From positions 124,001 to 188,000 of IMG/VR virus record IMGVR_UViG_3300009158_000031: DNA of 64,000 nt, one strand, 5' to 3'. A model generated the notes under the pieces. The model worked only from the letters and a program-made list of their open reading frames with translations. It ran no database searches and was not told where the DNA came from. Both the position numbers and the translations under genes were made by a program. Each line of letters opens with the position of its first letter. The stretch's first letter is position 1. Below, one piece after another: positions 2,383-57,285 of the stretch.

Positions 2383-3060
2383 ATGATTAATCCAATTAAA
2401 GGTACTTTTAAAACCTTTCATAATTTCATTAAAATTATAGGTCATAACGATAAAGAGTTAGATCCTAAACAATTTACTCGAATTGATACAGAAGAGAAGG
2501 TTCTTTATCTAACGTTTGATACCTGTCCAACTAATGGAGTAGACTTCGATACCGTAAATTGGTTAATGGAAAATAAAATACCAGCAACCATATTTCTAAA
2601 TATTGAATGGTATAAAACAAACAAATCGAAAGATCTGTCATTCTTAAAATCCTCACAATTTGAAATTGGTGGTCATGGATATAATCATAAACGTCCATTT
2701 AGACAAGATCTTCGAGAACAAACATATGATATTGATTCTTGTGTAAACTTCATTGATAGTGAATTAAAACGAGAAGTAAAATGGTATCGTTGTCCTTATG
2801 GAAAACCTAATGAAGATACCTTTAATATATTAGAACCTTTAGGTATTAGATACGCATCATGGGCTGGTCATGTATTTGACAAGAGTGTACCTGATTTAGC
2901 AAATCCAAATAAAGTTGCATTATCATATCTAGCTCAAAATACTCGTCCTGGAGATATTTTGTTATTTCACATCAATGGTGAAGGAATTAATACATTAGAG
3001 ATTTTAAAGATTGCTCATACATGGGCAATCGATCAAGGATATTCCTTCAAAACGCTATAA
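2383..3060 (+). CDS. Polysaccharide deacetylase (NodB/CE4 family)
   Basis: CE4 motifs LYLTFDTCP, GHGYNH, RCPYG and GDILLFH. Confidence 0.85.
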   Translation: MINPIKGTFKTFHNFIKIIGHNDKELDPKQFTRIDTEEKVLYLTFDTCPTNGVDFDTVNWLMENKIPATIFLNIEWYKTNKSKDLSFLKSSQFEIGGHGYNHKRPFRQDLREQTYDIDSCVNFIDSELKREVKWYRCPYGKPNEDTFNILEPLGIRYASWAGHVFDKSVPDLANPNKVALSYLAQNTRPGDILLFHINGEGINTLEILKIAHTWAIDQGYSFKTL

Positions 3061-7900: not shown

Positions 7901-8160
7901 ACCGTTGGGAATTCAACAGTGCTAATAATCGTTTAGAAATTAAAACTTTAGCCGACAATTTCCTATCACAAATCCTTTCTGATGGTGGAGTTTACGACTT
8001 CCAAAACATTATGGATACAACTAACAATACGACTGAGATCATCGATAACAATTATGGAATCCTTGATACTTACATCGAACCTGTTAGAGGAATGGGTATC
8101 TTAGTTCACAGAACTACAATTCTAAGAACTGGTGCTATTTCAACTGGTAACTTTATTTAA
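4909..8160 (+). CDS. gp18: Tail sheath protein (T4 gp18-like) with a large Gly/Ala/Thr-rich central insertion
   Basis: N-terminal SGVYRLEFDKS and IIGFSKKGPFNTP; C-terminal SALSQIHVRELLIYI..WEFN and DFQNIMDTTNNT..IIDNN..IEPVRGM; 1083 aa. Confidence 0.95.
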   Translation: MAISPSLQQFKSSGVYRLEFDKSQITNIPSETIRLIIGFSKKGPFNTPVLCKDTVFFKEIFGDIDTSLERKGSFFHRTALVSLDRGPVIVLNLLNLDDTLDQSQFRSISTASWQANSAVKYAPVSNYFNQDKFWFTDAQALIDTADNSDYQSVLAQRLLNLANVGRKNMSVFTKKSTTLGFDILAKDWYGTGKVPEFINENDYISDYMVDLIIVEGDFSNYQSLAIDPIYGTYFDATGLKTTITDSYGNILDGLTAFLNLNSVNVLGVYTGCLIPEFQDKNGNNLFIQDLVNLETSKTGLLLGINVDTIDDAPETIGNDLIDLIGHGIESQEPTVVDFLSYYGSIVSAMPYAGATGIDTLIVAGTAGQTGAQALMIASAGLTGASATNGWKTTTGHYDTLLVYGPSATLPTSFASKFANETAFATFRTAVSVDNTFIKAGASANTTGASGNYSYLASESYDTTTDILTLKISNVAGSGVTGPTSVAQGYYYLYPVGLTAGGTASLPVIQSVNFNFAEGGNLFTGVANQLYQDNLSGILTDGDKVKVNNAGATATAYAEFNRVSTNDFSGATFTNANAFGNEAPILNAFTNYIEVNAYTNPNLSTGATAITPQTTYVVNTLTGNINESFALWGGTAYTNPTNVVWVDNGSTGPLGLNGFNGLIIKNQLLLQNFGGTGGATSNSPITGKSRLTRILSVAEITDPTSDLYKKIKITTVDPIFISATSEIERYKEASNFVTHYRPSALRGYTLRTGQMPDGTDTRQNEILDVMYNSNIAAALADRETISFRYIIDSFQGTIEPSTKIRLTKLAKNRQSALAIVNMPSVKQFKDSTNPIFKLTSSSQFDAAYIADGGNLSTNPSNIFSLPGIADGGNYSAFYGPNLTIREAGKNTSVPPAAHVGNLYIDKYTQALPYSIIAGPRRGVITGTGLVGVEYNFDRTDLDSIEPFGYNAIVNKRGFGLTINANQTAQQTVKSALSQIHVRELLIYIQDGIEAILKNYRWEFNSANNRLEIKTLADNFLSQILSDGGVYDFQNIMDTTNNTTEIIDNNYGILDTYIEPVRGMGILVHRTTILRTGAISTGNFI

Positions 8161-8172
8161 TATTTGAATGAA

Positions 8173-8196
8173 GCTGGGATTCGCAAGGATCCCAGC
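8173..8196 (+). other. GNRA-capped hairpin between sheath and tube genes (mRNA stabiliser/processing site or weak terminator)
   Basis: gctgggattc-GCAA-ggatcccagc: 10-bp stem with one G.U pair, no U-tract. Confidence 0.55.
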
Positions 8197-8254
8197 CAAT
8201 TCATTTACGAATCAGTAAGATAAATAATAAAATACACAAAAAAAGCAATATACA

Positions 8255-8809
8255 ATGCCAGGATTACCACATTTTCTAAACAGTAAAGCGGCTACTAAAT
8301 ACTACGAACCGTTTTATCAAAACTTGTTTGAGGTAAACATTCTTCCTCCTTCTACTATTTCTGGTGGAGAGATCTTGATTGAACACGTAAATAAAATCGG
8401 CGGTTTAACTCAAGATAGAGGTTCAGAAGCAACCACTCAATCATACAAATTCGCTAAGAGATCTTACGCAATGGGAACTCCTACAGATACCATTACAGAT
8501 TTAACAATCGGTTTCTCTCTTAACTTAAACGATGCAAACGAACTATACGTATATAAAACATTACGTGATTGGTTCCGTTTGATCTATAACCCACTTACTG
8601 GTGAACAAGGTTTGAAGAAAGATTATGTAGGTACTCTCGTTATTACAAACTATAATCGTGCCGGAGATATCTTCTGGCAACGTACTTTCCATGATTGTTT
8701 CCCTACTGGAGATATCGGTGAATTAGCTGCAGATTACTCAGGTGGTGAAAAAGTTGATATGCCAGACGTTAAATTTCGTTCTGATTGGTGGGAAGAGAAC
8801 ATCGTTTAA
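8255..8809 (+). CDS. gp19: Tail tube protein (T4 gp19-like)
   Basis: YKTLRDWFRLIYNPLTG..YVGTLVITNYNRAGDIFWQRTFHDCFP; 184 aa directly after the sheath. Confidence 0.9.
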   Translation: MPGLPHFLNSKAATKYYEPFYQNLFEVNILPPSTISGGEILIEHVNKIGGLTQDRGSEATTQSYKFAKRSYAMGTPTDTITDLTIGFSLNLNDANELYVYKTLRDWFRLIYNPLTGEQGLKKDYVGTLVITNYNRAGDIFWQRTFHDCFPTGDIGELAADYSGGEKVDMPDVKFRSDWWEENIV

Positions 8810-8830
8810 TTTCAATCTATTAAGACTTTT

Positions 8831-8861
8831 AAAGAGAACTTCGAAAGAGGTTCTCTTTTGT
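8831..8861 (+). terminator. Rho-independent terminator after tail tube
   Basis: aaagagaacttc-GAAA-gaggttctcttt followed by tgtt. Confidence 0.75.
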
Positions 8862-8918
8862 TGTATATTCATATAAGTAAGAGATAAATATAATAACGAA
8901 AAAAAATTATATTTAAAA

Positions 8919-9182
8919 ATGGGTGAAACGTCGGTTGTTGGTATAATTTTAGCACTAATCGGTATATTTAAAGGAAAAGACATATGGGAATTCTTTAAAC
9001 ATCGAGCTACTATTAAAAGTAAAACTAATGACAAGGTCATTGAGATTTATGAAAAACAACTAAATACTTGCGAAACTAAAGTTCAGCTTTTAGAAACAAA
9101 AAATGATAAATTGTCTAAGAGATTTGAAACTAAATTGAAGAGTCGAGGAAAAACCAAAGAAGAACCTCTTAAAAAAGATTAA
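8919..9182 (+). CDS. Small membrane protein with coiled coil (holin/spanin-like, unassigned)
   Basis: N-terminal hydrophobic helix VVGIILALIGIF, then a heptad-rich C-terminus. Confidence 0.35.
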   Translation: MGETSVVGIILALIGIFKGKDIWEFFKHRATIKSKTNDKVIEIYEKQLNTCETKVQLLETKNDKLSKRFETKLKSRGKTKEEPLKKD

Positions 9183-9185
9183 AAT

Positions 9186-9449
9186 ATGAAAAACTACATA
9201 AACACATTTGAAGAGTTCTTAAATGAATCAATTAACGAAAATGTTTGGGCAGATATAACTAAATCAGCAAAACCTACTAAAGGTCCTTGGACTCTAGTAT
9301 CATCTGATAATAAAAAAGTTTTAGCCCAGAGCACAACTGATAATATACACATGCTTCCTGCTCATTTTGAATCACTGAAACTAAAATTTCCAAAATCAAG
9401 TATTCATATAGAAAGTGCTTCCGGTGAAGTAATTTGGAAAATGAAATAA
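9186..9449 (+). CDS. Putative internal head protein with capsid-targeting sequence (CTS 1)
   Basis: Starts MKNYINTFEEFLNESINE; compare the T4 IPII/IPIII CTS MKTYQEFIAE. Confidence 0.65.
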   Translation: MKNYINTFEEFLNESINENVWADITKSAKPTKGPWTLVSSDNKKVLAQSTTDNIHMLPAHFESLKLKFPKSSIHIESASGEVIWKMK

Positions 9450-9454
9450 TCAAT

Positions 9455-9910
9455 ATGAAAAATTACATAAACACATTTGAAGGTTTCTTAAATGAAGTTC
9501 GATTAAATGAAGATAAAATGCCGGTAGTTTCGGACTTTAAAGCTAACCCAACCGTATTGGATGGTGTTAAAATTAAAAACCTAGCCGAAGAAAATCCTGA
9601 ACAGGTGTTCATTATAAAGAAGGAATATGGCAAATGGCCTGATGATATACTTGCTAAATACAGCAAAACAGAAACTTCGATAACTGAATTTCTACCAATC
9701 GATAAATATGCTACAATGACAAAGTTAGAGTACTTAGGTTCTATGGCTGAAGTTATTGATATGATGTTCGGAGCTGACGAATGGCCACCAGCTAAACAGA
9801 AAGAACTTGCAAATGAACCATACTTATCTACTAATAAACAAGGAGAAGTTATAATAGATGTTCAACGAGGAAATATCAGTAAGTTTGTAAAATTAGCAGA
9901 AAAAAAGTAA
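9455..9910 (+). CDS. Putative internal head protein (CTS 2)
   Basis: True start is ATG 9455: MKNYINTFEGFLNEVRLNE. Confidence 0.65.
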   Translation: MKNYINTFEGFLNEVRLNEDKMPVVSDFKANPTVLDGVKIKNLAEENPEQVFIIKKEYGKWPDDILAKYSKTETSITEFLPIDKYATMTKLEYLGSMAEVIDMMFGADEWPPAKQKELANEPYLSTNKQGEVIIDVQRGNISKFVKLAEKK

Positions 9911-9920
9911 TTTAACTAAT

Positions 9921-10526
9921 ATGAAAAATTACATAAACACATTTGAAGGCTTCTTAAATGAATCTAAATACAAAGGAAATATCTCAGGAGATTCTGCTGA
10001 ATATATTGCTAAAGAAATGTCACAATATGTTAAAGGCATAATTAAACAGCCTAATGATAATGTTACTTACTTCCATTTAAAAGATAAATCCGGCAAATCA
10101 AAAGTTATTAAAACCTTATTAGATGTTTATGGATTAGAAGCAGTAGATGGTGGAAATCAATTTTCTCCATCACCTACTATTAAATTTGATAACGATCAAC
10201 TTCTTGAATCCCTTAGATCAGGTCCTAATGATGCTAAAATATATCCCATTAAAAAAGGAAGTGATCCAGAAGATCTTCTTTCCGGTAGATCTAGAGGATC
10301 ATGGGTAAGTTCAAAAACCATTAATGATATATTAGACGTTTTTGGTAAGGAAATGACCATTTATAAAGGTGACGAAATCACAGAATTCCTTCAAGTTAAT
10401 AGCCGAGATAATAGTGACATATATAAAATAGTTAGACGAGATTTAAGAGGACCTAGAACGGTTGGTTATATCCCTTCATATTATCAGAATTTTGACCAAA
10501 CCGAAGAAATAAACAATACTCGTTAA
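9921..10526 (+). CDS. Putative internal head protein (CTS 3)
   Basis: MKNYINTFEGFLNES; a possible second internal site at QLLES. Confidence 0.65.
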   Translation: MKNYINTFEGFLNESKYKGNISGDSAEYIAKEMSQYVKGIIKQPNDNVTYFHLKDKSGKSKVIKTLLDVYGLEAVDGGNQFSPSPTIKFDNDQLLESLRSGPNDAKIYPIKKGSDPEDLLSGRSRGSWVSSKTINDILDVFGKEMTIYKGDEITEFLQVNSRDNSDIYKIVRRDLRGPRTVGYIPSYYQNFDQTEEINNTR

Positions 10527-10527
10527 T

Positions 10528-11010
10528 ATGAAAAACCACATAAACACATTTGAAGGATTCTTAAATGAAGCTCGATTAAATGAAAGCAAACCTGCTATGA
10601 TGTACTATGTAGTAGCCAAGGATGTCATTAAGGATAGAAGACTTAAAGTATATCCTGAAAACATCGAAAGACTTTTGAACAACTTACAAGCAGACGGACA
10701 TTTATCATATGATGCAACGATAACATCAGATGCAAAGAAAGATATTGAAAACGCATTAGATAAGTTAGACTTGAAAGGGAATGAATTGCTTTCATATGCA
10801 AGAAAAGGCATGAAGTACGAAAGTGAAGATGTTAATGAAGCCAATCAAATTAAAGTTGGAACTTTTGTTAGATACAAAAAAGACGAAGATTTTACTGGTG
10901 GTAAGATCAAATCTATAAGTTCTGGTAAAGCAGAAATACATAATTGGGATGGTTCAACAACAGAACTTCCACTTAAAGATCTTGAATATATTGAGTCTTG
11001 GAATAATTAA
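10528..11010 (+). CDS. Putative internal head protein, two modules (CTS 4)
   Basis: MKNHINTFEGFLNEARLNE; internal EDVNE followed by a small SH3/Tudor-like beta module (IKVGTFVRY..GKIKSI..AEIHNWDG). Confidence 0.65.
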   Translation: MKNHINTFEGFLNEARLNESKPAMMYYVVAKDVIKDRRLKVYPENIERLLNNLQADGHLSYDATITSDAKKDIENALDKLDLKGNELLSYARKGMKYESEDVNEANQIKVGTFVRYKKDEDFTGGKIKSISSGKAEIHNWDGSTTELPLKDLEYIESWNN

Positions 11011-11013
11011 AAT

Positions 11014-11421
11014 ATGAAACCTATCAAACTATATAAAGAGTTTATTAATGAGGCAAAAGACGTTGATTCGGCAATGAAGAAAATCGATGATTTGCCAAAA
11101 GGATCAACCTTTGAAGATGCCAAAAGAATAGATCGTATTTTTGATATCAGTAAACATAGTTGGAGTGAGGTTGTGGAAACTTTTGAAAAGAATCAAAAAT
11201 CCGCAAAGATTAAACCGATAAATATAAAAGACATACAAATAACTCAACCAAATATCCAGAGCAATAAAGTGAAAGCCATGATTGAGAAATTTGATAAATT
11301 ACCTACAATTAATGCAGTTCAATTTCCGGATGGAATATCCATATATGATGGACATCATCGTCTATTAACTGCTTGGTCAATAGGAGAAACACGAATCAAA
11401 GTTAATCTTGTAAAAATATGA
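11014..11421 (+). CDS. CTS-bearing ParB/Sulfiredoxin-fold protein (CTS 5)
   Basis: MKPIKLYKEFINE, then INIKDIQITQPNI and IYDGHHRLLTA (ParB/Srx DGxHR motif). Confidence 0.7.
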   Translation: MKPIKLYKEFINEAKDVDSAMKKIDDLPKGSTFEDAKRIDRIFDISKHSWSEVVETFEKNQKSAKIKPINIKDIQITQPNIQSNKVKAMIEKFDKLPTINAVQFPDGISIYDGHHRLLTAWSIGETRIKVNLVKI

Positions 11422-11648
11422 AACACCTACACACATACAAAGAGTTCTTATTCGAGTCAACGATTTCCGAAATGAAGATAACTTCAGTTGGCGTTAAAGA
11501 GATTCTTAAGAAGCTTTATGACGATGCTAAACTTACAAAAGCATTACATTTTAAAAACTTCCGAGATGCACTCGATTCTATTCTTGGATATAGTCAAACG
11601 GAATTAGAAGAATTAGAAACAGAGATAAAAGAACTAGAGCACGCTTAA
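11418..11648 (+). CDS. Putative internal head protein (CTS 6)
   Basis: MKHLHTYKEFLFESTISE. Confidence 0.6.
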   Translation: MKHLHTYKEFLFESTISEMKITSVGVKEILKKLYDDAKLTKALHFKNFRDALDSILGYSQTELEELETEIKELEHA

Positions 11649-11670
11649 GATAATTTAAAAAATAAAAAAC

Positions 11671-12501
11671 ATGAAACATACACAAACATTCAAAGAGTTC
11701 TTAAATGAACAAGAAGAGATACTTAATGAAGATAGTTCTCTTGCACTTATGGTAATACTGCAAGCGGCTATAGTTAATGGACTTCTAATAGGTCAAATGG
11801 CGGCTAGTGGTGGTGGAGATGGCTTTCATCCTATCGATGATTTAAAAGCTTGGTGGGCGAAACGTAAAAAAGATAAAGCTGTAAAAAGTATTGTTGATAA
11901 ATTAAAAGAAGATCCTGAAGTTTTAGCCTTTTTGAAAATGTCAAATTGGGCACAAAAAGGAAAATGGTATAAACTTATTGAACCTAAACTTAATGACGAA
12001 GAGAAAAAATATCTAAAAAGTATTTCAAGAACTCCATTTATGAATGAGGAAGTTAATGAAAATTCCGCAATCCTTCTTGATCTTTCTGATAAGCAGTTGG
12101 CACTTTCTATAAAGGCTAAATTACCAGCCAAGTATAAAAAAGATACGAAGACTTTAATATACAATGCTCCATATTCAATGGTTTCTCATGGTGCTAAACT
12201 TACAAACCTTCCAACTCCTTCACGAGTATATCAATTGGAAAAAATGAATGAAACTTATAGAGGATCTGATAATTGGATATCTTTATCTTCATTAGCTATT
12301 GTACAAGATACAACCAATCAAGTTACTTTTGTAATTGTATATGAAGAATTTGATCCAATTCAATTTGATGAAATAAAATCAAATAAAGATTTGTACAAAG
12401 AAGAGGATTATAAAGACGAAAAAGATTTGCTTAAAAAGATGCAAACTTGGTTTGCTTATTCTGAAAAGGTCTTTAAAGAAGTAATAGAAGATCACTCATA
12501 A
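11671..12501 (+). CDS. Putative internal head protein, two modules (CTS 7)
   Basis: MKHTQTFKEFLNEQEEILNE; hydrophobic segment LALMVILQAAIVNGLLIG; internal FMNEEVNE linker. Confidence 0.6.
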   Translation: MKHTQTFKEFLNEQEEILNEDSSLALMVILQAAIVNGLLIGQMAASGGGDGFHPIDDLKAWWAKRKKDKAVKSIVDKLKEDPEVLAFLKMSNWAQKGKWYKLIEPKLNDEEKKYLKSISRTPFMNEEVNENSAILLDLSDKQLALSIKAKLPAKYKKDTKTLIYNAPYSMVSHGAKLTNLPTPSRVYQLEKMNETYRGSDNWISLSSLAIVQDTTNQVTFVIVYEEFDPIQFDEIKSNKDLYKEEDYKDEKDLLKKMQTWFAYSEKVFKEVIEDHS

Positions 12502-12512
12502 AAAAACATAAT

Positions 12513-12989
12513 ATGAAACATATACTCACATTCAAAAACTTCTTAAACGAGGAAAGAGTTTATGGAATGTTCAATGATTCTCAAGGAAAACCATCTAAAC
12601 TTTCACAAGAGATTTTAGATATTTGTCTAAAAGCACTACCTAAATATGTAATAGATAATATTGAATCAGTTGAAGCTTCCGGTTATTCTAAGACAAATTT
12701 AGCATCACCTCCTACGGTTAGTAATAAAGGTCAATCAAGAGGTGAAAATGATTATACGACTATTGTTCTAATATTCAAAAATCCAATGGGAAAATCTAAA
12801 ACAACTGAATTGACGGTTGGATTAAGAAAAAGAACTTCTGGACCAGGAACTGGTTATCTTGCGGTTAAACCTACTGCAAATGGTCATTATGTTTTACCTG
12901 AACATAGTGCCGCAATTGAATTTTATGATGCAGCGCCTGAAAGTTTAGCGGATTTATATAAGAGTACACTAGAAAAATTAATGAAATAA
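12513..12989 (+). CDS. Putative internal head protein (CTS 8)
   Basis: MKHILTFKNFLNEE. Confidence 0.65.
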   Translation: MKHILTFKNFLNEERVYGMFNDSQGKPSKLSQEILDICLKALPKYVIDNIESVEASGYSKTNLASPPTVSNKGQSRGENDYTTIVLIFKNPMGKSKTTELTVGLRKRTSGPGTGYLAVKPTANGHYVLPEHSAAIEFYDAAPESLADLYKSTLEKLMK

Positions 12990-12990
12990 T

Positions 12991-13353
12991 ATGAAACATA
13001 TACCAACATTCGATAATTTCCTAAATGAAGGAACCATCATGATTTTTCACTACTCAAAGAAATCTTCAGAGATTGATGGTGACGTGAAAGAATTACAGAA
13101 GAAAGCTCAAGAATTTATTAAAATCGCAAGAGACAAAGATTACAATATATCTTCTAACGATTCCGTACTTTATTTTCCAAATTTTAAATGGGCAGGAGGT
13201 AAACAAATCTTTGGACCATCATTAGGTATTAAAGCAGGATCAGAAACAATGCTAATTAATCCAATAGGCTCTGATAAAATAATCAAGATTAGCGAAGGCT
13301 TGCTTGTTCGTTTTGTAAAAGACGGCAGAATCGAATCATATAATTTATACTAA
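12991..13353 (+). CDS. Putative internal head protein (CTS 9)
   Basis: MKHIPTFDNFLNEG. Confidence 0.65.
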   Translation: MKHIPTFDNFLNEGTIMIFHYSKKSSEIDGDVKELQKKAQEFIKIARDKDYNISSNDSVLYFPNFKWAGGKQIFGPSLGIKAGSETMLINPIGSDKIIKISEGLLVRFVKDGRIESYNLY

Positions 13354-13354
13354 T

Positions 13355-13603
13355 ATGAAACATATACTCACATTCAAAAACTTCTTAAATGAAGGATTCA
13401 AGAAACCTTATAGCGAAAAAATGAGCCTTGAGGATTTTTCTGCTATAGAAGTTGGAAGTGAGGTTCTTTATGCTGGAGCAACTTACGAAGTGGTTAACAA
13501 CGATGGTGCAACTCTTCAATTAAAACCGGCTAAAGGTGCTAATGGTAAAGCGACTAAAGTTAATTTCTCAATGTTTAATGTTGCTGGAGCAATCCGCGAT
13601 TAG
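13355..13603 (+). CDS. Putative internal head protein (CTS 10)
   Basis: MKHILTFKNFLNEG; SH3-like cargo (IEVGSEVLYAGATYEVV). Confidence 0.65.
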   Translation: MKHILTFKNFLNEGFKKPYSEKMSLEDFSAIEVGSEVLYAGATYEVVNNDGATLQLKPAKGANGKATKVNFSMFNVAGAIRD

Positions 13604-13688
13604 TTGAATCTTCATAAATTTCAAATCATATAATTAAAATTATAAGTCTAAGGATATGATCTGCTTATAGTAAAAAATATCATATGTT

Positions 13689-15050
13689 TTGAAATTAAGA
13701 CAAGGGTTATTATTCCTAAAATCTCTACACACAAGATCTAAATCCGATGAAGAAGTTCTTCAATGGATAGAATCTAGACGATCATTAGTTAAGCACACGA
13801 TTCAACAAATCGATCTTAATAAGCTAAATGGTTGGAATTTCTACGATCATAAGATAGAACATACTTCTGGTAAATTTTATCAGATTCATATTAGACGCAA
13901 TGAGTTAGATGGAAGGATTTGGGATCAACCAATAATCAATCAACCCGAAATTGGTATTCTTGGATTTATTACCAAACAAATCGATGACGTACTTCATTTT
14001 CTAGTTCAAGCTAAAATTGAACCAGGAAATATCAATATCGTTCAGTTATCACCAACCGTACAATCAACTAAAAGTAATTTCACTAAAGTTCATGGTGGTG
14101 CATTAACACCCTTTGTAGAATATTTCTTAAAAGGAGAATCTAGAATTTTAGTAGATCAACTACAATCCGAACAATCTAGTAGGTTCTTTCAAAAACGTAA
14201 TCGCAATATTATTATAGAAGTTGAAGATGAGTTATCTCATGAAAATTATTTATGGATGACTCTTGGAGATCTTGTTGCATTAACTAGATATCCTAATACT
14301 GTCAATATGGATAGTCGAACCGTTTTAAGTTGTATTCACTTTGGTTCATATTCATTTGAACATCTAGAACTAAGAGATTTTCTTGGTGGAATTTCACATG
14401 ATTCTGCTTGGATAGATTCACTACTTCGTAAAGATGTATATCAAAAATCCCATCCAGAAATTCTTTCATTAATTACCGATCTTAAATTTAGAAGAGAAGC
14501 TTTGACTAGGTTAATTTATCTTTCAGAATCACATGATTGGAATTTGATTGATGGTAAGATTGTTCATAAAGATGAAAAATATTTTGATGTAGTAGGTTAT
14601 CGAATATTTATTGAAAATCGAGAATCCGCTCAATGGGATCAACCTTTAATCCGACCTAAATCTACTGGAATATGTTGTTTCTTTGCTCGTAAATTTGAAG
14701 GAGTATTTCACTTACTAGTTCAGCTAAAAGATGAGATTGGATCTTTTGATGGTGTTGAAATGGCACCAACTATTCAAATGTCTGAAGAGAATTTAGATCT
14801 ATCGCCTTTCTTTGAATCGTATCAAAGACTAATAAATACAGATTCGGTTTTATTTGATGTTATGCAATCCGAAGAAGGAGGAAGATTTTATCAAGAACAA
14901 AACCGAAATATTATCATAGAAGTTAATGAAGAACTGGAACTTCCAAGAAATTATATTTGGATGACTCTTAATCAACTTAAAACATTCTTACAATATAACA
15001 ATTACGTAAATATTCAAACACGTTCAATTATGTCATCTTTACCTCTATGA
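13689..15050 (+). CDS. NDP-hexose 2,3-dehydratase (EvaA/SpnO/TylX3 family), TTG start
   Basis: Two-repeat architecture: WDQPIINQPEIGILGF..LVQAKIEPGN..QLSPTVQST..QSEQSSRFFQKRNRN, then WDQPLI..LLVQ..EMAPTIQ..QSEEGGRFYQEQNRN. Confidence 0.92.
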   Translation: MKLRQGLLFLKSLHTRSKSDEEVLQWIESRRSLVKHTIQQIDLNKLNGWNFYDHKIEHTSGKFYQIHIRRNELDGRIWDQPIINQPEIGILGFITKQIDDVLHFLVQAKIEPGNINIVQLSPTVQSTKSNFTKVHGGALTPFVEYFLKGESRILVDQLQSEQSSRFFQKRNRNIIIEVEDELSHENYLWMTLGDLVALTRYPNTVNMDSRTVLSCIHFGSYSFEHLELRDFLGGISHDSAWIDSLLRKDVYQKSHPEILSLITDLKFRREALTRLIYLSESHDWNLIDGKIVHKDEKYFDVVGYRIFIENRESAQWDQPLIRPKSTGICCFFARKFEGVFHLLVQLKDEIGSFDGVEMAPTIQMSEENLDLSPFFESYQRLINTDSVLFDVMQSEEGGRFYQEQNRNIIIEVNEELELPRNYIWMTLNQLKTFLQYNNYVNIQTRSIMSSLPL

Positions 15051-16000
15051 AAGTAGCTATTCTAAATTGTTCAGATATTGCAAAACGAAGAATGATTCCG
15101 GCATTTCAGGCAATACCTGAAGTTGAAGTTTCTATCGTATGTAGCCGAGATATTCGTAGAGCTAAACAATATGCTGAAGAATTTGGAATCCCAAAATATA
15201 CGGATAATCCAGATGAAATTATTGGAGTTGATCTAGTTTATATTTCATCTCCTCCATCTGAACATTTTGATGCGATTAAAACATTTATAAAGAGAAAAAT
15301 TAATATTCTTTGCGAAAAATCTCTTACCATAGATGCATATCAAACAACCTATCTAATTAATCTAGCCGATAAACAAGGAGTTCTTATACAAGAAAATTAT
15401 GGATTTCCTTTTCATACTCAGTGGAAATGGATAAAAGAAAACCTAAATAAAATAGGAGATCTTCTTTACATAAGAAGTGGATTTGAATTTCCTCCAAGAA
15501 ATACCGAAACAGATTTTCGTTACAAATCTGCTCTCGGTGGTGGTGCTCTTTTCGATGCCGGTGGATATCCTATTAAATTAGCCTCTTTATTATTGGGAAC
15601 TCCTCAAAAACTTGATGCAGTTACTCATATATCAAAATCACTTGATATTGATCTTTCTGGAAGAACATTTATTATTGATGAAACTGGAAAATCTGCATTT
15701 TTAACTTGGAGTTTTGAATCTACTTATCGTTGTGATGTAGAAATTGTAGGAACTCAAGGAACAATTAAAGCTGGTAAGATATTTACTCCTAGAATTGATG
15801 AACATGTTGAAGTGTCAATTTCACTTATTGGAGAGCCGGTAGAAAGACAACAATTTGTTTGCGATCATTTCGTTGAACTTATTCGAGATTTTATAAATAG
15901 AATAAAGATTAAAGATAACTCTCATCATAAAAGTATATTAAAACAATCAAAATGGCAAACATATGTATCGTCTACTAGTATCAGAACCTTCACTAACTAA
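15047..16000 (+). CDS. Gfo/Idh/MocA oxidoreductase, likely NDP-sugar 3-ketoreductase (SpnN/KijD10-like)
   Basis: CSDIAKRRMIPA, ILCEKSL, GGGALFDAGGYP; coupled to the 2,3-dehydratase by an ATGA overlap. Confidence 0.82.
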   Translation: MKVAILNCSDIAKRRMIPAFQAIPEVEVSIVCSRDIRRAKQYAEEFGIPKYTDNPDEIIGVDLVYISSPPSEHFDAIKTFIKRKINILCEKSLTIDAYQTTYLINLADKQGVLIQENYGFPFHTQWKWIKENLNKIGDLLYIRSGFEFPPRNTETDFRYKSALGGGALFDAGGYPIKLASLLLGTPQKLDAVTHISKSLDIDLSGRTFIIDETGKSAFLTWSFESTYRCDVEIVGTQGTIKAGKIFTPRIDEHVEVSISLIGEPVERQQFVCDHFVELIRDFINRIKIKDNSHHKSILKQSKWQTYVSSTSIRTFTN

Positions 16001-17045
16001 CTTCGAAGAATTTGCAAATATTGCAAAAGAAGTTTGGGCAAGTGGAATCCTAACGCACAATGGACCTAAGGTCAAAGAACTCGAACATCGGTTAAAAGAA
16101 CAATGGCAGATACCTCATCTATCATTAGTTACAAATGGAACTATTGCACTTGAAGTTGCAATGAGAGCTCTAGAACTTCCTAAAGGAAGTGAAATTATTA
16201 CAACTCCATTTACCTGGATTGCAACTGCATCAGCTATTCAATGGCAAGATTATGAACCTATTTTTGTTGACGTTGATCCAAATACTCTTAATATAGATCC
16301 GGCTAAAATTGAAGAAAAAATAACAGATAGAACATCTGCTATTTTAGCGGTTCATGTATTCTCGAATCCATGTGATGTAGATTCTATTCAAGAAATTGCA
16401 GATCGTCGAGGTCTACGAGTTATTTATGATGGTGCTCATGCAGTTGGTGTAAAATATAAAGGAGTAGATCTTTCTCAATTCGGTGATATTACAACTCATT
16501 CATATCATGCAACTAAAATTTATAATAGTGGAGAAGGTGGATCGATTATTACTAGAAATCCAGAGTTAGCTAAAAGAATTGATCGTCTTCGCTTCTTTGG
16601 ACATAATGAAAAGAAAGATATTGTACATGAAGGAACTAATGCTAAAATGCATGAAATCTCTGCTGCAATTGGATTAGCTAATTTAAAAATGTTACCTAAA
16701 ACAATTATGCATAGAAAACTTTTAACTCTTATGTATAAACATAGAATGGAAGGTTTACCGGTTAGATATCAAGCAATCAGCAACGACTCTTATAATTTTT
16801 CATATTTCCCCATCATATTTGAAACAGAAGAACAATGTCTTAAAGTGTATGCGGCATTAGATGCTATTAAAATTATGCCTCGTAGATATTTCTATCCATC
16901 AGTTAACGAATTCAAAATCTTTGATCCTCAATCATGTCCTATTAGCGAAGATATTTCTAGACGAATTCTTTGTCTACCATGTCACGATGGTGTGAAGCTT
17001 ATGGATGTCGATGAAATCTCACACACAATAATCAAAACTTTCTAA
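15963..17045 (+). CDS. vioA: DegT/DnrJ/EryC1 PLP aminotransferase, VioA-like sugar 4-aminotransferase
   Basis: VTNGTIAL, IYDGAHA, SYHATKIYNSGEGG (catalytic Lys retained), GTNAKMHEISAAIGL, RRYFYP. Confidence 0.85.
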   Translation: MYRLLVSEPSLTNFEEFANIAKEVWASGILTHNGPKVKELEHRLKEQWQIPHLSLVTNGTIALEVAMRALELPKGSEIITTPFTWIATASAIQWQDYEPIFVDVDPNTLNIDPAKIEEKITDRTSAILAVHVFSNPCDVDSIQEIADRRGLRVIYDGAHAVGVKYKGVDLSQFGDITTHSYHATKIYNSGEGGSIITRNPELAKRIDRLRFFGHNEKKDIVHEGTNAKMHEISAAIGLANLKMLPKTIMHRKLLTLMYKHRMEGLPVRYQAISNDSYNFSYFPIIFETEEQCLKVYAALDAIKIMPRRYFYPSVNEFKIFDPQSCPISEDISRRILCLPCHDGVKLMDVDEISHTIIKTF

Positions 17046-17046
17046 G

Positions 17047-17661
17047 ATGCATGTAGTTATTGGAGCTAATGGATTAGCTAAACAAGTACTTCCTTTATAC
17101 GACGCAAATCCTAGAGTTATCTTCTTTGATGATACTGAAAATGCAGGAGAGAACCTATATGAACATAAAATTGCACATGATCTTAAATGGGTAAAAGAGT
17201 ATACGTCAATTGGCGAGACAGTAAATTTCTCAATTTGTATAGGAAATCCTAAATGGCGTGAGTATTTTTATTATCTTCTGGTTGATATGGGAGCCACACC
17301 AATTAATATCTTATCGGAATTATCCTCCATTCAAGAGAGATCCGAGATTGACACAGGGAATATCTTTTTAGACTACACTTTAGTAGAAACCGATGTAAAA
17401 ATTGGAAAAGGAAACCTTATAAATTGCTATGCCGGTTTATTTCATGATTCTCAAATAGGAGATTTTAATGAGATTATGCCAGGAGCTAAAATTCTAGGAG
17501 GAGCTAAAATAGGTAACTCTTGTAGAATAGGAACGAATGCAACAATTCTTCCACAAATACATATTTGCTCGAATGTAGTAATTGGAGCTGGAGCAGTGGT
17601 TACTAAAAATATTACTGAACCAGGAACATATATTGGAATTCCTGCAAGGAAGCAAGGATAA
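17047..17661 (+). CDS. NeuD/PglD/VioB-like sugar N-acetyltransferase (left-handed beta-helix)
   Basis: VVIGANGLAK Rossmann-like N-terminus; hexapeptide repeats; ends GAGAVVTKNI..GTYIGIPAR. Confidence 0.88.
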   Translation: MHVVIGANGLAKQVLPLYDANPRVIFFDDTENAGENLYEHKIAHDLKWVKEYTSIGETVNFSICIGNPKWREYFYYLLVDMGATPINILSELSSIQERSEIDTGNIFLDYTLVETDVKIGKGNLINCYAGLFHDSQIGDFNEIMPGAKILGGAKIGNSCRIGTNATILPQIHICSNVVIGAGAVVTKNITEPGTYIGIPARKQG

Positions 17662-17684: not shown

Positions 17685-18566
17685 ATGGAATTTTTAAAGT
17701 ACAACAACTTCATTCTTAATGAGCAATCTAAATGGGTTAATTTAGACACTATTAATGAAGCTGCACTTACGGCTACTCCAGATAAAAGCGTTAAGTTTGG
17801 TATTTGTATTACCACTTACAAAATTGATGCTGGTGGTAGACAAAATCACATGTCCACCGAAAAAGTTCTGAGAGAATGTTTAGAGTCAGTTAAAACACAG
17901 AGTTGGCCAGAATGGAAAGTCTATATTATGGGAGACGCATATCCACAAGAAGAATGGCCGGAAATTGAAAAACTTGCTGCATCTATCGTTCCAAAAGATA
18001 AACTTTGGATGGATAATCTAAAAACACCAGGAGAAAGAGACAAATATGATGGATCTATTCCACATCTAACAGGAGGAAATACGGCAGCAAACGTGACCAT
18101 CGCTCAAATGAAAAAAGATGGCATTAAGTATTTTGCACGTCTTGACCATGATGATGCTTGGAAAACCGATCATTTAAAAACTCATGCTACTGCTTATACA
18201 CAATTCCCAGAAGTTGTTTATAGTTTAACACAAGCTCGCAAGAAAAGAGTAAAAGGAGATGCCGGATCTTACATGTATTTTCCTGACAAAGGAACATATG
18301 AGAATTCTGAAAATAATTACACATTAGGTCTTGGTGGACAATGTCATTCAGCAATGACTTGGAAATTAGAACCTTTAAAATATATCAAGTATCGTACTTG
18401 GGATCAACAAAAAGCGACACAACCTCGTAGAAAAGAGTGCTTCCCTGGCGATTGGGATAATACTGAAAGAATTAAAAGAATTGTAGAAGATGAAAATAAT
18501 AAACACTCAATGATTTTTGTTCCTAAATTAACTGTAAAATATCGTAACTCTGAAGGAAAATTTTAA
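17685..18566 (+). CDS. GT2-like glycosyltransferase with N-terminal CTS
   Basis: MEFLKYNNFILNE..TINE leader; GICITTY, CLESVKTQS, IMGD, YFARLDHDDAW (DxDD). Confidence 0.75.
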   Translation: MEFLKYNNFILNEQSKWVNLDTINEAALTATPDKSVKFGICITTYKIDAGGRQNHMSTEKVLRECLESVKTQSWPEWKVYIMGDAYPQEEWPEIEKLAASIVPKDKLWMDNLKTPGERDKYDGSIPHLTGGNTAANVTIAQMKKDGIKYFARLDHDDAWKTDHLKTHATAYTQFPEVVYSLTQARKKRVKGDAGSYMYFPDKGTYENSENNYTLGLGGQCHSAMTWKLEPLKYIKYRTWDQQKATQPRRKECFPGDWDNTERIKRIVEDENNKHSMIFVPKLTVKYRNSEGKF

Positions 18567-18567
18567 T

Positions 18568-19140
18568 ATGAAAAAACTACTAATCTTATTAATCTCGAGT
18601 CTTCCTCTTTTTGGATATTCACAAGACACTCTGGTAAAAAGACCTATCTATACTGTAAAATATTCTCAATCACTACAACAACCTCTTTGGTTAGAGTATT
18701 CTGTTAAAAGTCGTGAATGTGGAGCGAAACGAGATGGAATGGATTTTTATTCCGAAAAGGGAATTATAACAAGTGACAACGCTGATTATGCCGATAATGT
18801 TTATGATAAAGGTCATATGGCTCCTGCTGCCGATTTCTGTGTTAATCGAGAAACTCTATTACTAACATTTTCCTATCTCAATTGTGCTCTTCAACACTAT
18901 AAATTAAACCGAGGTGTATGGAAACAACTTGAATCAAATGAACGTGAATGGTCTAAAACTGATTCATTGATTATTCGAATCGATGTTATTTTTGAAAATG
19001 CTACCAAACTTCCTAGTGGTGCAACTATTCCTACTGCTTTTAAGAAGACTATTAAATTCTATAATTCAAAGAAGACGGTTGTTTATTACTTCAAAAACGA
19101 ACCTCCTACAAAAACACTAGATCAATATCTAGTTAAATAA
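18568..19140 (+). CDS. Secreted DNA/RNA non-specific endonuclease (NucA/Endonuclease_NS)
   Basis: Signal peptide MKKLLILLISSLPLFGYSQ; YDKGHMAPAAD; TFSYLNCALQ..LNRGVWKQLE. Confidence 0.92.
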   Translation: MKKLLILLISSLPLFGYSQDTLVKRPIYTVKYSQSLQQPLWLEYSVKSRECGAKRDGMDFYSEKGIITSDNADYADNVYDKGHMAPAADFCVNRETLLLTFSYLNCALQHYKLNRGVWKQLESNEREWSKTDSLIIRIDVIFENATKLPSGATIPTAFKKTIKFYNSKKTVVYYFKNEPPTKTLDQYLVK

Positions 19141-19144
19141 CTAA

Positions 19145-19201
19145 TTGTTAATAACTTTTGATCCCGAGATTTTTTAATCTCGGGATTTTGTATTATATTT
19201 G
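19145..19201 (+). promoter_or_regulatory. Composite early promoter, copy 1
   Basis: TTGTTAATAACTT at 19145; Bacteroidota -7 element TATATTTG at 19194 (49 bp later); internal palindrome at 19161-19186. Confidence 0.8.
19161..19190 (+). terminator. Perfect inverted repeat embedded in promoter 1 (terminator for upstream operon and/or operator)
   Basis: atcccgagatt-tttt-aatctcgggat followed by tttg. Confidence 0.55.
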
Positions 19202-19223
19202 TATATACAATTTAAAACAATAT

Positions 19224-19616
19224 ATGCAAAAGATTAGTGCTCAAGTTGTCCTCATCAACGAGGAAGGAAAAATTCTCTGTGTTTCTAGAAAAGATAACCA
19301 TTCTGATTTTGGTTTACCTGGTGGTAAATCCGATCCTGAAGATAATGGTGATCCCGTTCAAACTGCCATTAGAGAAACCAAAGAAGAAACCGGTTTAGAT
19401 GTTCACGATCTTAAACTTATATTTGCAATTCATAAATACGGTTTCATGAATTATACTTATGTTGCCAAGTATTCTGGTGAAATTCATTTTAATGAACCTC
19501 ATATTGTTAAATGGGCACCAATCAAATTAGCAACGGAAGGAACCTTCGGTGTGTATAATCAATTAGTTGCAGAATCCTTAAGAGATTCAAATTATGAATT
19601 CATCCGCCATTTTTAA
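19224..19616 (+). CDS. NUDIX hydrolase
   Basis: Nudix box GLPGGKSDPEDNGDPVQTAIRETKEETGL; start moved to ATG 19224, downstream of the promoter. Confidence 0.92.
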   Translation: MQKISAQVVLINEEGKILCVSRKDNHSDFGLPGGKSDPEDNGDPVQTAIRETKEETGLDVHDLKLIFAIHKYGFMNYTYVAKYSGEIHFNEPHIVKWAPIKLATEGTFGVYNQLVAESLRDSNYEFIRHF

Positions 19617-57057: not shown

Positions 57058-57285
57058 ATGTCATACCGAGAATTAATCCCAAATTCAAATTTTTCTAATC
57101 CTCTTAACGAATTAATGTTTAAATTCATGGATCGTTTAGATATGGATGCTCGAGATCGAGAGATCTTCGAGGATTTGGCGTTATTCATTTATCATGAAGG
57201 TAAATTAAAAGGTGCAGAAGAGTACTTAAACGAAATAACTGAAATTAAATTAATAGATAATGGAGAAAACAAAACAGCCGATTAA
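57058..57285 (+). CDS. Hypothetical protein
   Basis: 75-aa ORF. Confidence 0.55.
   Translation: MSYRELIPNSNFSNPLNELMFKFMDRLDMDARDREIFEDLALFIYHEGKLKGAEEYLNEITEIKLIDNGENKTAD

What the first reader, a model, noticed from the sequence alone, without database searches (positions are those of the whole stretch)
13689..17661. Antibiotic-type 2,6-dideoxy-aminosugar pathway in a phage
Seen: a translationally coupled operon of NDP-hexose 2,3-dehydratase, Gfo/Idh/MocA reductase, VioA-like aminotransferase (Lys retained, HATK) and hexapeptide acetyltransferase. Established: a 2,3-dehydratase plus 3-ketoreductase (SpnO/SpnN, EvaA type) removes the C2 hydroxyl in actinomycete antibiotic sugars; VioA/VioB make 4-acetamido-4,6-dideoxyglucose, which Mimivirus also uses on its fibrils. 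Inference: the product is probably dTDP-4-acetamido-2,4,6-trideoxyhexose, made from host dTDP-4-keto-6-deoxyglucose (no rmlA/rmlB in this window). I am not aware of a 2-deoxy sugar pathway described in a phage. The acceptor could be virion protein, phage DNA or the host surface.
Basis: partly seen in the sequence, partly recalled or inferred. Interest (0 to 1): 0.8.

Follow-up and report, generated by a model that had tools for sequence, protein, structure and literature searches.

The report
Jumbo phage 2-deoxy aminosugar gene cassette
An uncultivated freshwater jumbo phage carries an intact, conserved set of genes predicted to make an unusual 2-deoxy, N-acetylated amino sugar and attach it to an unknown target; this chemistry has not been reported for any virus, but the same cassette is common in the surface-polysaccharide loci of Bacteroidota bacteria.

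Summary
Window 13689-17661 encodes four tightly packed genes: an EvaA-type NDP-hexose 2,3-dehydratase, a KijD10-like Gfo/Idh/MocA sugar 3-ketoreductase, a DesI/VioA-like PLP aminotransferase and a PglD/VioB-class N-acetyltransferase. All known catalytic residues are present, and dN/dS against a 96%-identical relative is 0.05-0.16. The transcription unit probably continues through a lineage-specific GT-A glycosyltransferase (17685-18566) and a non-specific nuclease (18568-19140) to a hairpin at 19160-19187.

The predicted product, dTDP-4-acetamido-2,4,6-trideoxyhexose made from host dTDP-4-keto-6-deoxyglucose, is the best-supported reading. It rests on homology only.

"Antibiotic-type" is misleading. 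The nearest cellular relatives (42-49% identity) are mostly Bacteroidota and sit in Wzx/Wzy polysaccharide loci. DH-KR-AT, and sometimes DH-KR-AT-AcT in the same order, is frequent there.

The phage context does look new. The dehydratase has no homologue in 50,697 GenBank phage records and no PHROG family, I found no paper describing one, and only 14 IMG/VR contigs carry it, from two independent lineages.

The window also holds a predicted colitose-type 3,6-dideoxy sugar pathway and five more glycosyltransferases. The acceptor is unknown.

The parts
13689..15050 (+). NDP-hexose 2,3-dehydratase (EvaA type, double Nudix-like fold), 453 aa, TTG start
   Evidence: PF03559 E 5e-134 with 2 stretches. 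PDB EvaA 4J7G E 5e-86. EvaA catalytic E139 and E190 (PMC8987622) align to E111 and E161, which are invariant in 9 homologues. dN/dS 0.05.
15047..16000 (+). Gfo/Idh/MocA sugar C3-ketoreductase (KijD10-like), 317 aa
   Evidence: PF01408 and PF22725. Best PDB hit is KijD10 3RBV at E 5.5e-38; the next hit is 1.5e-18, and WbpB/WlbA do not appear. The Lys (K91, position of the K102 mutants) and the Tyr (Y174) are conserved in all phage and bacterial cassette homologues. The gene always lies directly 3' of the dehydratase.
15963..17045 (+). PLP-dependent DegT-family aminotransferase, DesI/VioA-like (predicted C4), 360 aa
   Evidence: PF01041 E 3e-90. The best NCBIfam model is DesI TIGR04427, 241 bits, below its 650-bit cut-off. 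PDB DesI 2PO3 is the best hit both as a single sequence (E 8e-50) and as a profile (236 bits, followed by 7B0M (depositor's name only 'Sugar aminotransferase') and then two perosamine synthase entries). HATK Lys185 is invariant.
17047..17661 (+). Left-handed beta-helix N-acetyltransferase of the NeuD/PglD/VioB class, 204 aa
   Evidence: TIGR03570 161.7 bits against a cut-off of 160.8, covering residues 3-201. PDB PglD 2NPO/3BSS E 5e-24 and VioB 7TXP E 3e-17. His133 aligns with the PglD catalytic His and is conserved.
17685..18566 (+). Lineage-specific GT-A (GT2-like) glycosyltransferase, 293 aa; candidate transferase for the product
   Evidence: Weak PF00535 hit. AF2 model pLDDT 72, pTM 0.76. 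GT-A fold with TM about 0.5 to AvpGT, SpsA, RmlT and TarP. Invariant D154-H-D-D157. dN/dS 0.05. It follows the sugar genes in L003-5 and in L010.
18568..19140 (+). DNA/RNA non-specific endonuclease, 190 aa; last gene before the hairpin. Its link to the sugar pathway is unproven.
   Evidence: PF01223 E 6e-24. phrog_14168 nuclease. TAATATG junction with the GT. dN/dS 0.07.
19160..19187 (+). Terminator-like hairpin (12-bp stem followed by a T-run) closing the six-gene unit
   Evidence: This is a consensus match only, and the count of such sites in the region is not above the shuffled expectation.

Best explanation
This is a phage-encoded nucleotide-sugar tailoring cassette. During infection it diverts the host's dTDP-4-keto-6-deoxy-D-glucose (the RmlA/RmlB product). 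The proposed steps are: (1) the EvaA-type dehydratase removes the C2 hydroxyl, giving dTDP-3,4-diketo-2,6-dideoxyhexose; (2) the KijD10-like reductase reduces C3; (3) the DesI/VioA-like aminotransferase aminates C4; (4) the PglD/VioB-class enzyme N-acetylates, giving dTDP-4-acetamido-2,4,6-trideoxyhexose; (5) the adjacent lineage-specific GT-A enzyme transfers it to an acceptor. The acceptor is most likely a phage-made glycan on a virion or other phage protein, built together with the colitose-type pathway and the five other GTs in the window. Shown here: gene presence, family membership, retention of catalytic residues, purifying selection, conservation of the DH-KR-AT core across a phage lineage, and its rarity in phages. 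Inferred: substrate, order of steps, C3/C4 regiochemistry, stereochemistry, the donor role of the adjacent GT, and the acceptor. The module resembles bacterial surface-glycan modules and has been kept in this phage lineage for a long time.
For: Family and best-structure matches fit each step. Catalytic residues are retained: DH E111/E161, KR K91/Y174, AT K185, AcT H133. dN/dS is 0.05-0.16 for all six genes against L003. DH-KR-AT keeps the same order in sister phages at 62-69% identity, always between the sheath module and topoisomerase II or the replication genes. The phage dehydratases form one clade with 100/100 support on a long stem. The cassette is collinear with bacterial DH-KR-AT(-AcT) modules in Wzx-flanked loci. 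Contigs from lake metatranscriptome libraries cover the cluster, some at 100% identity. Further GTs and a ColD/ColC-like pair lie in the same window.
Against: There is no biochemical evidence. The aminotransferase is below the DesI equivalog cut-off, and C3-specific enzymes (QdtB, WbpE) score only about 35-45 bits lower, so C4 specificity is not proven. In the phage clade the reductase has Asn in place of a Gly in the dinucleotide-binding turn ('ILNCSDIA'). L006, L007 and L009 lack the acetyltransferase and GT next to the core, so acetylation and this GT are not obligatory partners. No rmlA/rmlB was seen, and about 190 kb of the genome was not examined. RNA-library contigs may derive from DNA. 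Nothing identifies the acceptor.
Confidence: 0.7

Rival explanations
1. The enzymes are the same, but the purpose is to remodel the host cell surface (capsule, O-antigen or the Bacteroidota general O-glycan) during infection. The aim would be to block superinfection or to stop progeny adsorbing to debris, rather than to decorate the virion.
For: The closest cellular cassettes lie in Wzx/Wzy polysaccharide loci. The phage also encodes a protein with a T9SS C-terminal sorting domain, which points to interaction with the host envelope. GT11, GT10, GT32 and GT2 enzymes are typical of O-antigen assembly.
Against: The window has no Wzx, Wzy, priming phosphoglycosyltransferase or ligase. The adjacent GT family is tiny (about 24 members) and has no annotated bacterial relatives; the source contexts of its members were not examined.
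Confidence: 0.2
2. The sugar is attached to phage DNA as a hypermodified base. This would protect the DNA from host restriction and from the co-transcribed non-specific nuclease, which degrades unmodified host DNA.
For: The cassette ends with an Endonuclease_NS gene and lies beside a NUDIX gene and topoisomerase II. The best structural match of the GT is AvpGT, solved in complex with the nucleoside Ara-A (depositor's entry title), though only at TM about 0.5.
Against: The window has no hydroxymethylase, thymidylate-synthase-like or DNA-kinase gene. The GT is a generic GT-A with equally good matches to SpsA, RmlT and TarP. The genome assembles readily from many Illumina metagenomes. The six or so GTs and two sugar pathways suggest an oligosaccharide rather than a base adduct.
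Confidence: 0.07
3. The reductase, aminotransferase and acetyltransferase form a WbpB/WbpE/WbpD-like module (3-oxidation, 3-amination and 3-N-acetylation of a UDP-HexNAc). On this reading the dehydratase acts separately, or the aminotransferase works at C3 (EvaB-like) to give a 3-amino-2,3,6-trideoxy sugar.
For: The Gfo/Idh/MocA + DegT + LbH trio is also the signature of the WbpB/E/D pathway (own knowledge). WbpE and QdtB, both C3 enzymes, are significant PDB hits.
Against: The reductase hits KijD10 at E 5.5e-38 and does not hit WbpB/WlbA at all at E 1e-3 or better. The acetyltransferase belongs to the PglD/VioB class, which acts on C4 amines, rather than the WlbB/QdtC class. The best aminotransferase hits are the C4 enzymes DesI and perosamine synthases. 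In 79 of 83 bacterial loci the reductase is fused in order to the dehydratase.
Confidence: 0.06

Closest known systems
Actinomycete 2,6-dideoxysugar early steps: EvaA/SpnO/TylX3 2,3-dehydratases with KijD10/SpnN/TylC1 3-ketoreductases
   Same: Same two enzyme families and same gene adjacency, with the catalytic Glu pair and the Lys/Tyr pair retained.
   Different: EvaA scores only 293 bits, against 438-443 bits for the Bacteroidota homologues. The host is a phage of a probable Gram-negative bacterium, there is no aglycone or PKS context, and the downstream steps are viosamine-like rather than forosamine- or digitoxose-like.
VioA/VioB and DesI, PglD (4-amino-4,6-dideoxyhexose formation and N-acetylation); Mimivirus N-acetylviosamine on fibrils (own knowledge)
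   Same: A DegT aminotransferase with the PLP Lys, followed by a PglD/VioB-class acetyltransferase with the catalytic His. There is viral precedent for making 4-acetamido-4,6-dideoxyhexose.
   Different: Here the substrate would already be 2-deoxygenated. The aminotransferase does not reach the equivalog cut-offs. The Mimivirus pathway uses UDP-sugars and has no 2,3-dehydratase.
Uncharacterised DH-KR-AT(-AcT) cassettes in Bacteroidota polysaccharide loci (for example Brumimicrobium L050 and Flavobacteriaceae L057)
   Same: Identical gene order. AT identity is 46-56%, AcT 37%, DH 42-49% and KR 28-37%. The cassettes are flanked by Wzx flippases and by Gmd and Fcl-like genes.
   Different: Those are cellular loci with flippases. 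The phage version forms its own long-branched clade and is followed by a GT with only about 24 homologues, none annotated, and none found in the bacterial loci fetched here. I found no description of the sugar product of the bacterial cassettes.
Phage and giant-virus nucleotide-sugar auxiliary genes and virion glycosylation (cyanophage and pelagiphage DegT genes, mycobacteriophage virion glycosylation, chlorovirus and Mimivirus glycans)
   Same: Virus-encoded sugar-tailoring enzymes and GTs. DegT homologues occur in 88 GenBank phage records.
   Different: None of those records has a 2,3-dehydratase. PHROGs has no family for the dehydratase, the Gfo/Idh/MocA reductase or the adjacent GT.

Membership tests
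NDP-hexose 2,3-dehydratase (EvaA, PF03559) | Two tandem Nudix-like PF03559 domains in one chain | tested here: met
   Two stretches matched, 444 bits against a 25-bit cut-off. Both halves align to EvaA 4J7G.
NDP-hexose 2,3-dehydratase (EvaA, PF03559) | Pocket-A catalytic glutamates (EvaA E139, E190) | tested here: met
   They align to E111 (KIEPGN) and E161 (LQSEQ), which are invariant in alignment A1.
NDP-hexose 2,3-dehydratase (EvaA, PF03559) | Converts dTDP-4-keto-6-deoxyglucose to the 3,4-diketo-2,6-dideoxy product | not testable with these tools
   Requires an enzyme assay.
KijD10-type sugar C3-ketoreductase (Gfo/Idh/MocA) | Gfo/Idh/MocA two-domain fold with the catalytic Lys and Tyr (KijD10 K102, Y186) | tested here: met
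   PF01408 and PF22725. 3RBV at E 5.5e-38. K91 and Y174 are conserved.
KijD10-type sugar C3-ketoreductase (Gfo/Idh/MocA) | Canonical glycine-rich dinucleotide-binding turn | tested here: inconclusive
   The phage clade has 'ILNCSDIA' where KijD10 has 'VIGCADIA' and most bacterial homologues have 'ILG..NIA'. The position also varies in Bacteroides homologues, which have Cys.
KijD10-type sugar C3-ketoreductase (Gfo/Idh/MocA) | Genetic coupling to a 2,3-dehydratase | tested here: met
   ATGA overlap in the window. Adjacent in 79 of 83 bacterial loci and in the phage loci long enough to show it.
DesI/VioA dTDP-4-keto-6-deoxyglucose C4-aminotransferase | DegT fold with the PLP-binding Lys, i.e. not a His-type dehydratase | tested here: met
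   PF01041 at 303 bits. HATK K185 is invariant.
DesI/VioA dTDP-4-keto-6-deoxyglucose C4-aminotransferase | Scores above the curated equivalog threshold | tested here: not met
   TIGR04427 DesI 241 bits against 650; WecE 134 against 435. The enzyme works like a DesI/VioA enzyme but is not a curated member.
DesI/VioA dTDP-4-keto-6-deoxyglucose C4-aminotransferase | C4 regiospecificity | tested here: inconclusive
   DesI and two perosamine synthase entries (C4 enzymes) are among the top four hits; rank 2 (7B0M) is of unstated specificity; C3 enzymes (QdtB, WbpE) follow within about 45 bits.
NeuD/PglD/VioB sugar N-acetyltransferase (TIGR03570) | Full-length match above the curated cut-off, with N-terminal PglD_N domain plus LbH | tested here: met
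   161.7 bits against 160.8, which is marginal, covering residues 3-201. Pfam PglD_N scores 22.5 against 23.4, just below its cut-off.
NeuD/PglD/VioB sugar N-acetyltransferase (TIGR03570) | Catalytic His (PglD His125) | tested here: met
   H133 in 'LFHDSQIGDF' aligns to 'IEHECVIGEF' and is conserved in the phage and bacterial homologues.
GT-A / GT2 glycosyltransferase (gene 17685-18566) | GT-A Rossmann-like fold with a DXD-type metal/donor motif | tested here: met
   Foldseek probability 1.0 to several GT2 structures, TM about 0.5. Invariant D154-H-D-D157. The Pfam GT2 match covers only residues 59-99.
Phage DNA-glycosylation systems (T4 alpha/beta-GT, hmC/hmU hypermodification) | A base hydroxymethylase or kinase partner and a DNA-directed GT | tested here: not met
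   No such gene in the 64-kb window. The rest of the genome was not examined.

The most novel reading that the evidence does not exclude
This phage lineage synthesises its own complex glycan from at least two rare deoxysugars: a 4-acetamido-2,4,6-trideoxyhexose and a colitose-like 3,6-dideoxyhexose. It then installs the glycan on virion proteins, or, in the more radical version, on its DNA, with the co-transcribed nuclease sparing only modified DNA. This would be a bacteriophage counterpart of the autonomous glycosylation machinery of giant viruses, using a sugar not known from any glycoconjugate.
Probability: 0.3. Interest if true: 0.8.

Novelty: new variant of a known kind. Interest (0 to 1): 0.55.

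Why it matters
Virus-encoded sugar pathways are known, but I found none that removes the C2 hydroxyl. If the enzymes work as predicted, three things follow. First, the set of sugars that viruses are known to make would expand to include 2-deoxy aminosugars. Second, there would be compact, soluble, non-actinomycete versions of EvaA/KijD10-type enzymes, which could be useful for glyco-engineering of 2,6-dideoxysugars. Third, attention would turn to a large, uncharacterised set of DH-KR(-AT-AcT) cassettes in Bacteroidota capsule and O-antigen loci, including gut Bacteroides, whose products appear to be undescribed. Together with the colitose-type pathway and several GTs in the same window, the cassette suggests that some jumbo phages build elaborate glycans of their own. 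That bears on phage-host recognition and on how virions evade receptors or immune and lectin recognition.

Tried and rejected
1. WbpB/E/D-like reading of the reductase, aminotransferase and acetyltransferase trio. Rejected because the reductase matches KijD10 and not WbpB/WlbA, and the acetyltransferase is PglD/VioB class.

2. Recent capture from an actinomycete antibiotic cluster. Rejected because the nearest relatives are Bacteroidota polysaccharide loci and the phage clade sits on a long stem.

3. Chance ORFs or pseudogenes. Rejected on dN/dS of 0.05-0.16 and intact catalytic residues.

4. Looked for the dehydratase in cultured phages by megablast, tblastn and PHROGs. Nothing was found, while the aminotransferase positive control gave 88 records.

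5. Tried to find a phage rmlB on the same UViG by scanning IMG/VR with a Bacteroidota RmlB. The back-translated patterns were too specific (one unrelated hit), so this was uninformative.

6. The SDR near the L010 cassette was tested as a possible RmlB. It is GDP-mannose 3,5-epimerase-like.

7. Sequence search of the adjacent GT against the PDB gave nothing. Structure prediction was needed, and it gave only a generic GT-A assignment, so the acceptor stays open.

8. Literature searches for the predicted sugar returned only 2-acetamido-4-amino-2,4,6-trideoxyhexoses (AAT, bacillosamine), which are not 2-deoxy sugars.

9. The promoter scan was not above the shuffled expectation, so no promoter is claimed.

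Full report
**What is there**

The window is part of an uncultivated freshwater jumbo phage.
- It encodes a large terminase, a 1083-aa tail sheath, a T4-type baseplate protein, both topoisomerase II subunits and PhoH.
- It is 100% identical to IMG/VR UViG 3300009158_000031, a 254-kb contig, and to two other UViGs.
- The nearest cultured relatives by TerL are distant (29-34% identity): Sphingomonas phage PAU, Tenacibaculum phages PTm1/PTm5 and Flavobacterium phage MaF61. The best match overall is an uncultured huge phage at 44%.
- One protein carries a T9SS C-terminal sorting domain, and GC content is about 32%. Both point to a Bacteroidota host.
- The sequence recurs in many freshwater metagenomes deposited 2017-2025.

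**The observation**

At 13689-17661 there are four + strand ORFs.
- **Dehydratase (DH):** PF03559 NDP-hexose 2,3-dehydratase, E 5e-134, both halves matched.
- **Reductase (KR):** a Gfo/Idh/MocA oxidoreductase.
- **Aminotransferase (AT):** a DegT-family enzyme, E 3e-90.
- **Acetyltransferase (AcT):** a hexapeptide-repeat enzyme that just reaches the NeuD/PglB/VioB subfamily cut-off.

The junctions are an ATGA overlap, a 38-nt overlap and TAAGATG, so the "translationally coupled operon" description holds. The TTG start of the dehydratase matches the conserved N-terminus of homologues (MKxRQGL) and an ATG start at the same position in a sister phage.

The unit probably extends further. A 293-aa glycosyltransferase follows after 23 nt, then an Endonuclease_NS nuclease (TAATATG junction). 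Only then comes a 12-bp-stem hairpin with a T-run, at 19160-19187.

**Are the enzymes what they seem, and are they intact?**

- **Dehydratase.** It matches EvaA (4J7G) at E 5e-86. The two glutamates whose mutation abolishes EvaA activity, E139 and E190 (PMC8987622), align to E111 and E161. Both are invariant across phage and bacterial homologues.
- **Reductase.** The best solved relative is the sugar C3-ketoreductase KijD10, at E 5.5e-38, with a 20-order gap to the next hit. The WbpB/WlbA 3-dehydrogenases are absent from the list. The Lys at the position of the KijD10 K102 mutants and the active-site Tyr are conserved.
- **Aminotransferase.** It keeps the PLP lysine (HATK, K185). DesI is its best solved relative both as a single sequence and as a family profile; of the next three hits two are perosamine synthases, also C4 enzymes, and one (7B0M) carries no stated specificity.
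- **Acetyltransferase.** It is closest to PglD and VioB and keeps the catalytic His.

Against a sister phage whose dehydratase is 96% identical (L003), dN/dS is 0.05-0.16 for all six genes.

One oddity: in the phage clade the reductase has Asn where most relatives have a Gly in the dinucleotide-binding turn. That position also varies in Bacteroides homologues.

**Most likely mechanism**

The only route that uses all four activities in their known roles has five steps.
1. 2,3-dehydration of dTDP-4-keto-6-deoxyglucose.
2. C3 reduction.
3. C4 transamination.
4. N-acetylation, giving dTDP-4-acetamido-2,4,6-trideoxyhexose.
5. Transfer by the adjacent GT.

That GT has a GT-A fold (AF2 pLDDT 72; Foldseek TM about 0.5 to AvpGT, SpsA, RmlT and TarP) and an invariant DHDD motif. 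It has only about 24 homologues in 5.8 billion proteins; one of them shares a 217-kb contig with a dehydratase homologue, and I did not examine the context of the others.

The window has no rmlA or rmlB, so the precursor is presumably supplied by the host. About 190 kb of the genome was not examined. Substrate, step order, regiochemistry, stereochemistry and acceptor are all inferences.

The pathway is not specifically "antibiotic-type".
- The nearest cellular dehydratases (42-49% identity, 438-443 bits, against 293 bits for EvaA) are overwhelmingly from Bacteroidota.
- They sit in Wzx/Wzy polysaccharide loci together with rmlA and rmlB.
- Of 83 bacterial loci fetched, 79 have DH-KR adjacent, 39 have an AT homologue within 5 kb (about two-thirds of them a 42-56%-identical AT directly after KR) and 6 also have an AcT homologue nearby.
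- In a Brumimicrobium MAG and a Flavobacteriaceae MAG all four genes are contiguous in the phage's order. The Brumimicrobium cassette lies between two Wzx flippases and next to Gmd and an Fcl-like gene.

I found no description of the sugar these bacterial cassettes make.

**How the cassette is distributed in phages**

The DH-KR-AT core is conserved in sister phages at 62-69% identity. It always lies between the sheath module and topoisomerase II or the replication genes.
- L003, L004 and L005 keep the whole DH-KR-AT-AcT-GT-nuclease-NUDIX order.
- L010 has an LbH acetyltransferase upstream and the GT downstream.
- L006, L007 and L009 have neither next to the core, so some relatives may use the free amine.

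In a maximum-likelihood tree the six phage dehydratases form one clade with 100/100 support on a long stem (1.99 substitutions per site). This indicates long residence in the lineage.

A second, unrelated acquisition exists in a 405-kb UViG (L014). There the dehydratase sits with a Gfo/Idh/MocA reductase, a DegT enzyme, an RmlD-like reductase, a sugar C-methyltransferase (PF08484), a radical-SAM enzyme, a fucosyltransferase and a GT25.

**Novelty checks**

- tblastn of the dehydratase against 50,697 GenBank phage records found nothing at E 1e-5. The aminotransferase, used as a positive control, found 88 records.
- PHROGs has no family for the dehydratase, the reductase or the adjacent GT.
- Two motif-based scans of 2.9 million IMG/VR contigs returned the same 14 loci.
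- Full-text searches found no paper on a phage 2,3-dehydratase or a phage 2-deoxysugar pathway.

**Expression**

Contigs from four lake metatranscriptome libraries lie across the cluster. Some are 100% identical: 14996-15212, which spans the DH/KR junction, and 17242-17435. These libraries can contain DNA, so this is only suggestive.

**Acceptor**

The acceptor is unresolved.
- **Phage-built glycan on virion or other phage proteins (my preferred reading).** The same window holds a second deoxysugar route. It pairs a ColD-like PMP 3-dehydratase, which has His in place of the PLP Lys (2GMS, E 1e-52), with an Fcl/ColC-like reductase. Beside these lie GT11, GT10-like, GT2 and GT32-like enzymes, and further on a weakly SunS-like GT2. 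There is no flippase, polymerase or priming transferase.
- **Host-envelope remodelling.** This remains plausible, because the cassette's cellular relatives work in surface-polysaccharide loci.
- **DNA glycosylation.** The co-oriented nuclease hints at it, but no base-hydroxymethylating enzyme is present in the window.

**Verdict**

This is a real, intact and conserved cassette. The origin is better described as a bacterial surface-glycan module than as an antibiotic pathway. The phage context appears to be undescribed. I rate it a new variant of a known kind (virus-encoded nucleotide-sugar tailoring), of moderate to high interest.

Noticed in passing
window 47692-52713: A second glycan cluster. 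It contains a GT32-like enzyme (Gly_transf_sug), a GT2, a GT11, a GT10-like enzyme, an Fcl/ColC-like SDR (50625-51551) and a ColD-like PMP-dependent 3-dehydratase (51535-52713). The ColD-like protein matches 2GMS at E 1e-52 and has 'GHHISTIEGG', with His replacing the PLP Lys. This predicts a GDP-colitose-type 3,6-dideoxyhexose pathway that starts from host GDP-4-keto-6-deoxymannose.
   Followed up: partly
window 57260-58441: A 393-aa GT2 with a weak match to the SunS family of peptide S-glycosyltransferases (E 1e-14, far below the cut-off) and to phrog_13126. It could be a protein-directed GT.
   Followed up: no
window 34659-36581, 37963-39726 and 39723-40715: A phage protein with a cohesin domain plus a T9SS (Por) C-terminal sorting domain; a 587-aa Ser/Thr/Gly/Asn-rich protein; and a C-type-lectin-domain protein. 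The T9SS domain suggests a Bacteroidota host and export to the host surface. The other two may be fibres or adhesins and possible glycan acceptors or binders.
   Followed up: no
window 18568-19616: An Endonuclease_NS nuclease is packed directly behind the glycosyltransferase. A strong hairpin at 19160-19187 overlaps the listed TTG start of the following NUDIX ORF, so that ORF's true start is probably further downstream.
   Followed up: partly
window 2383-3060: A polysaccharide deacetylase (PF01522, E 8e-22) immediately upstream of the large terminase.
   Followed up: no
window 26265-30005 and 33936-34535: A 1246-aa protein with many repeated hydrophobic segments and a run of ten Gly, which looks like a tape measure protein. 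Its region has raised GC (0.36-0.39). There is also a phage sigma-70-like factor, and L010 has one too.
   Followed up: no
L014 / L109 (IMG/VR UViG 3300027899_000001, 405 kb), locus coordinates 6090-16873: An independent 2,3-dehydratase cluster in a megaphage-sized contig. It contains a DegT enzyme, an RmlD-like reductase, the dehydratase, a Gfo/Idh/MocA reductase, a FucT-like GT10, a radical SAM/SPASM enzyme, a GT25, FkbM-type methyltransferases and a sugar C-methyltransferase (PF08484). This suggests a branched or methylated 2,6-dideoxysugar.
   Followed up: partly
L015-L017 (Bacteroidota-type metagenome contigs), locus coordinates 7117-10484 and 15968-17440: Capsule or O-antigen loci with rmlA, rmlB, Wzx and Wzy carry two copies of an RmlD-like SDR followed by the dehydratase (the first also followed by the Gfo/Idh/MocA reductase; the locus ends within the second dehydratase). 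This predicts 2,6-dideoxyhexoses in Bacteroidota-type surface polysaccharides. The dehydratase protein is seen on dozens of contigs.
   Followed up: partly
L010 16939-19309: In a sister phage the cassette is followed by a GDP-mannose 3,5-epimerase-like SDR (2C59, E 6e-83) and a C5 cytosine DNA methyltransferase. It is preceded by a DNA polymerase B fragment.
   Followed up: partly
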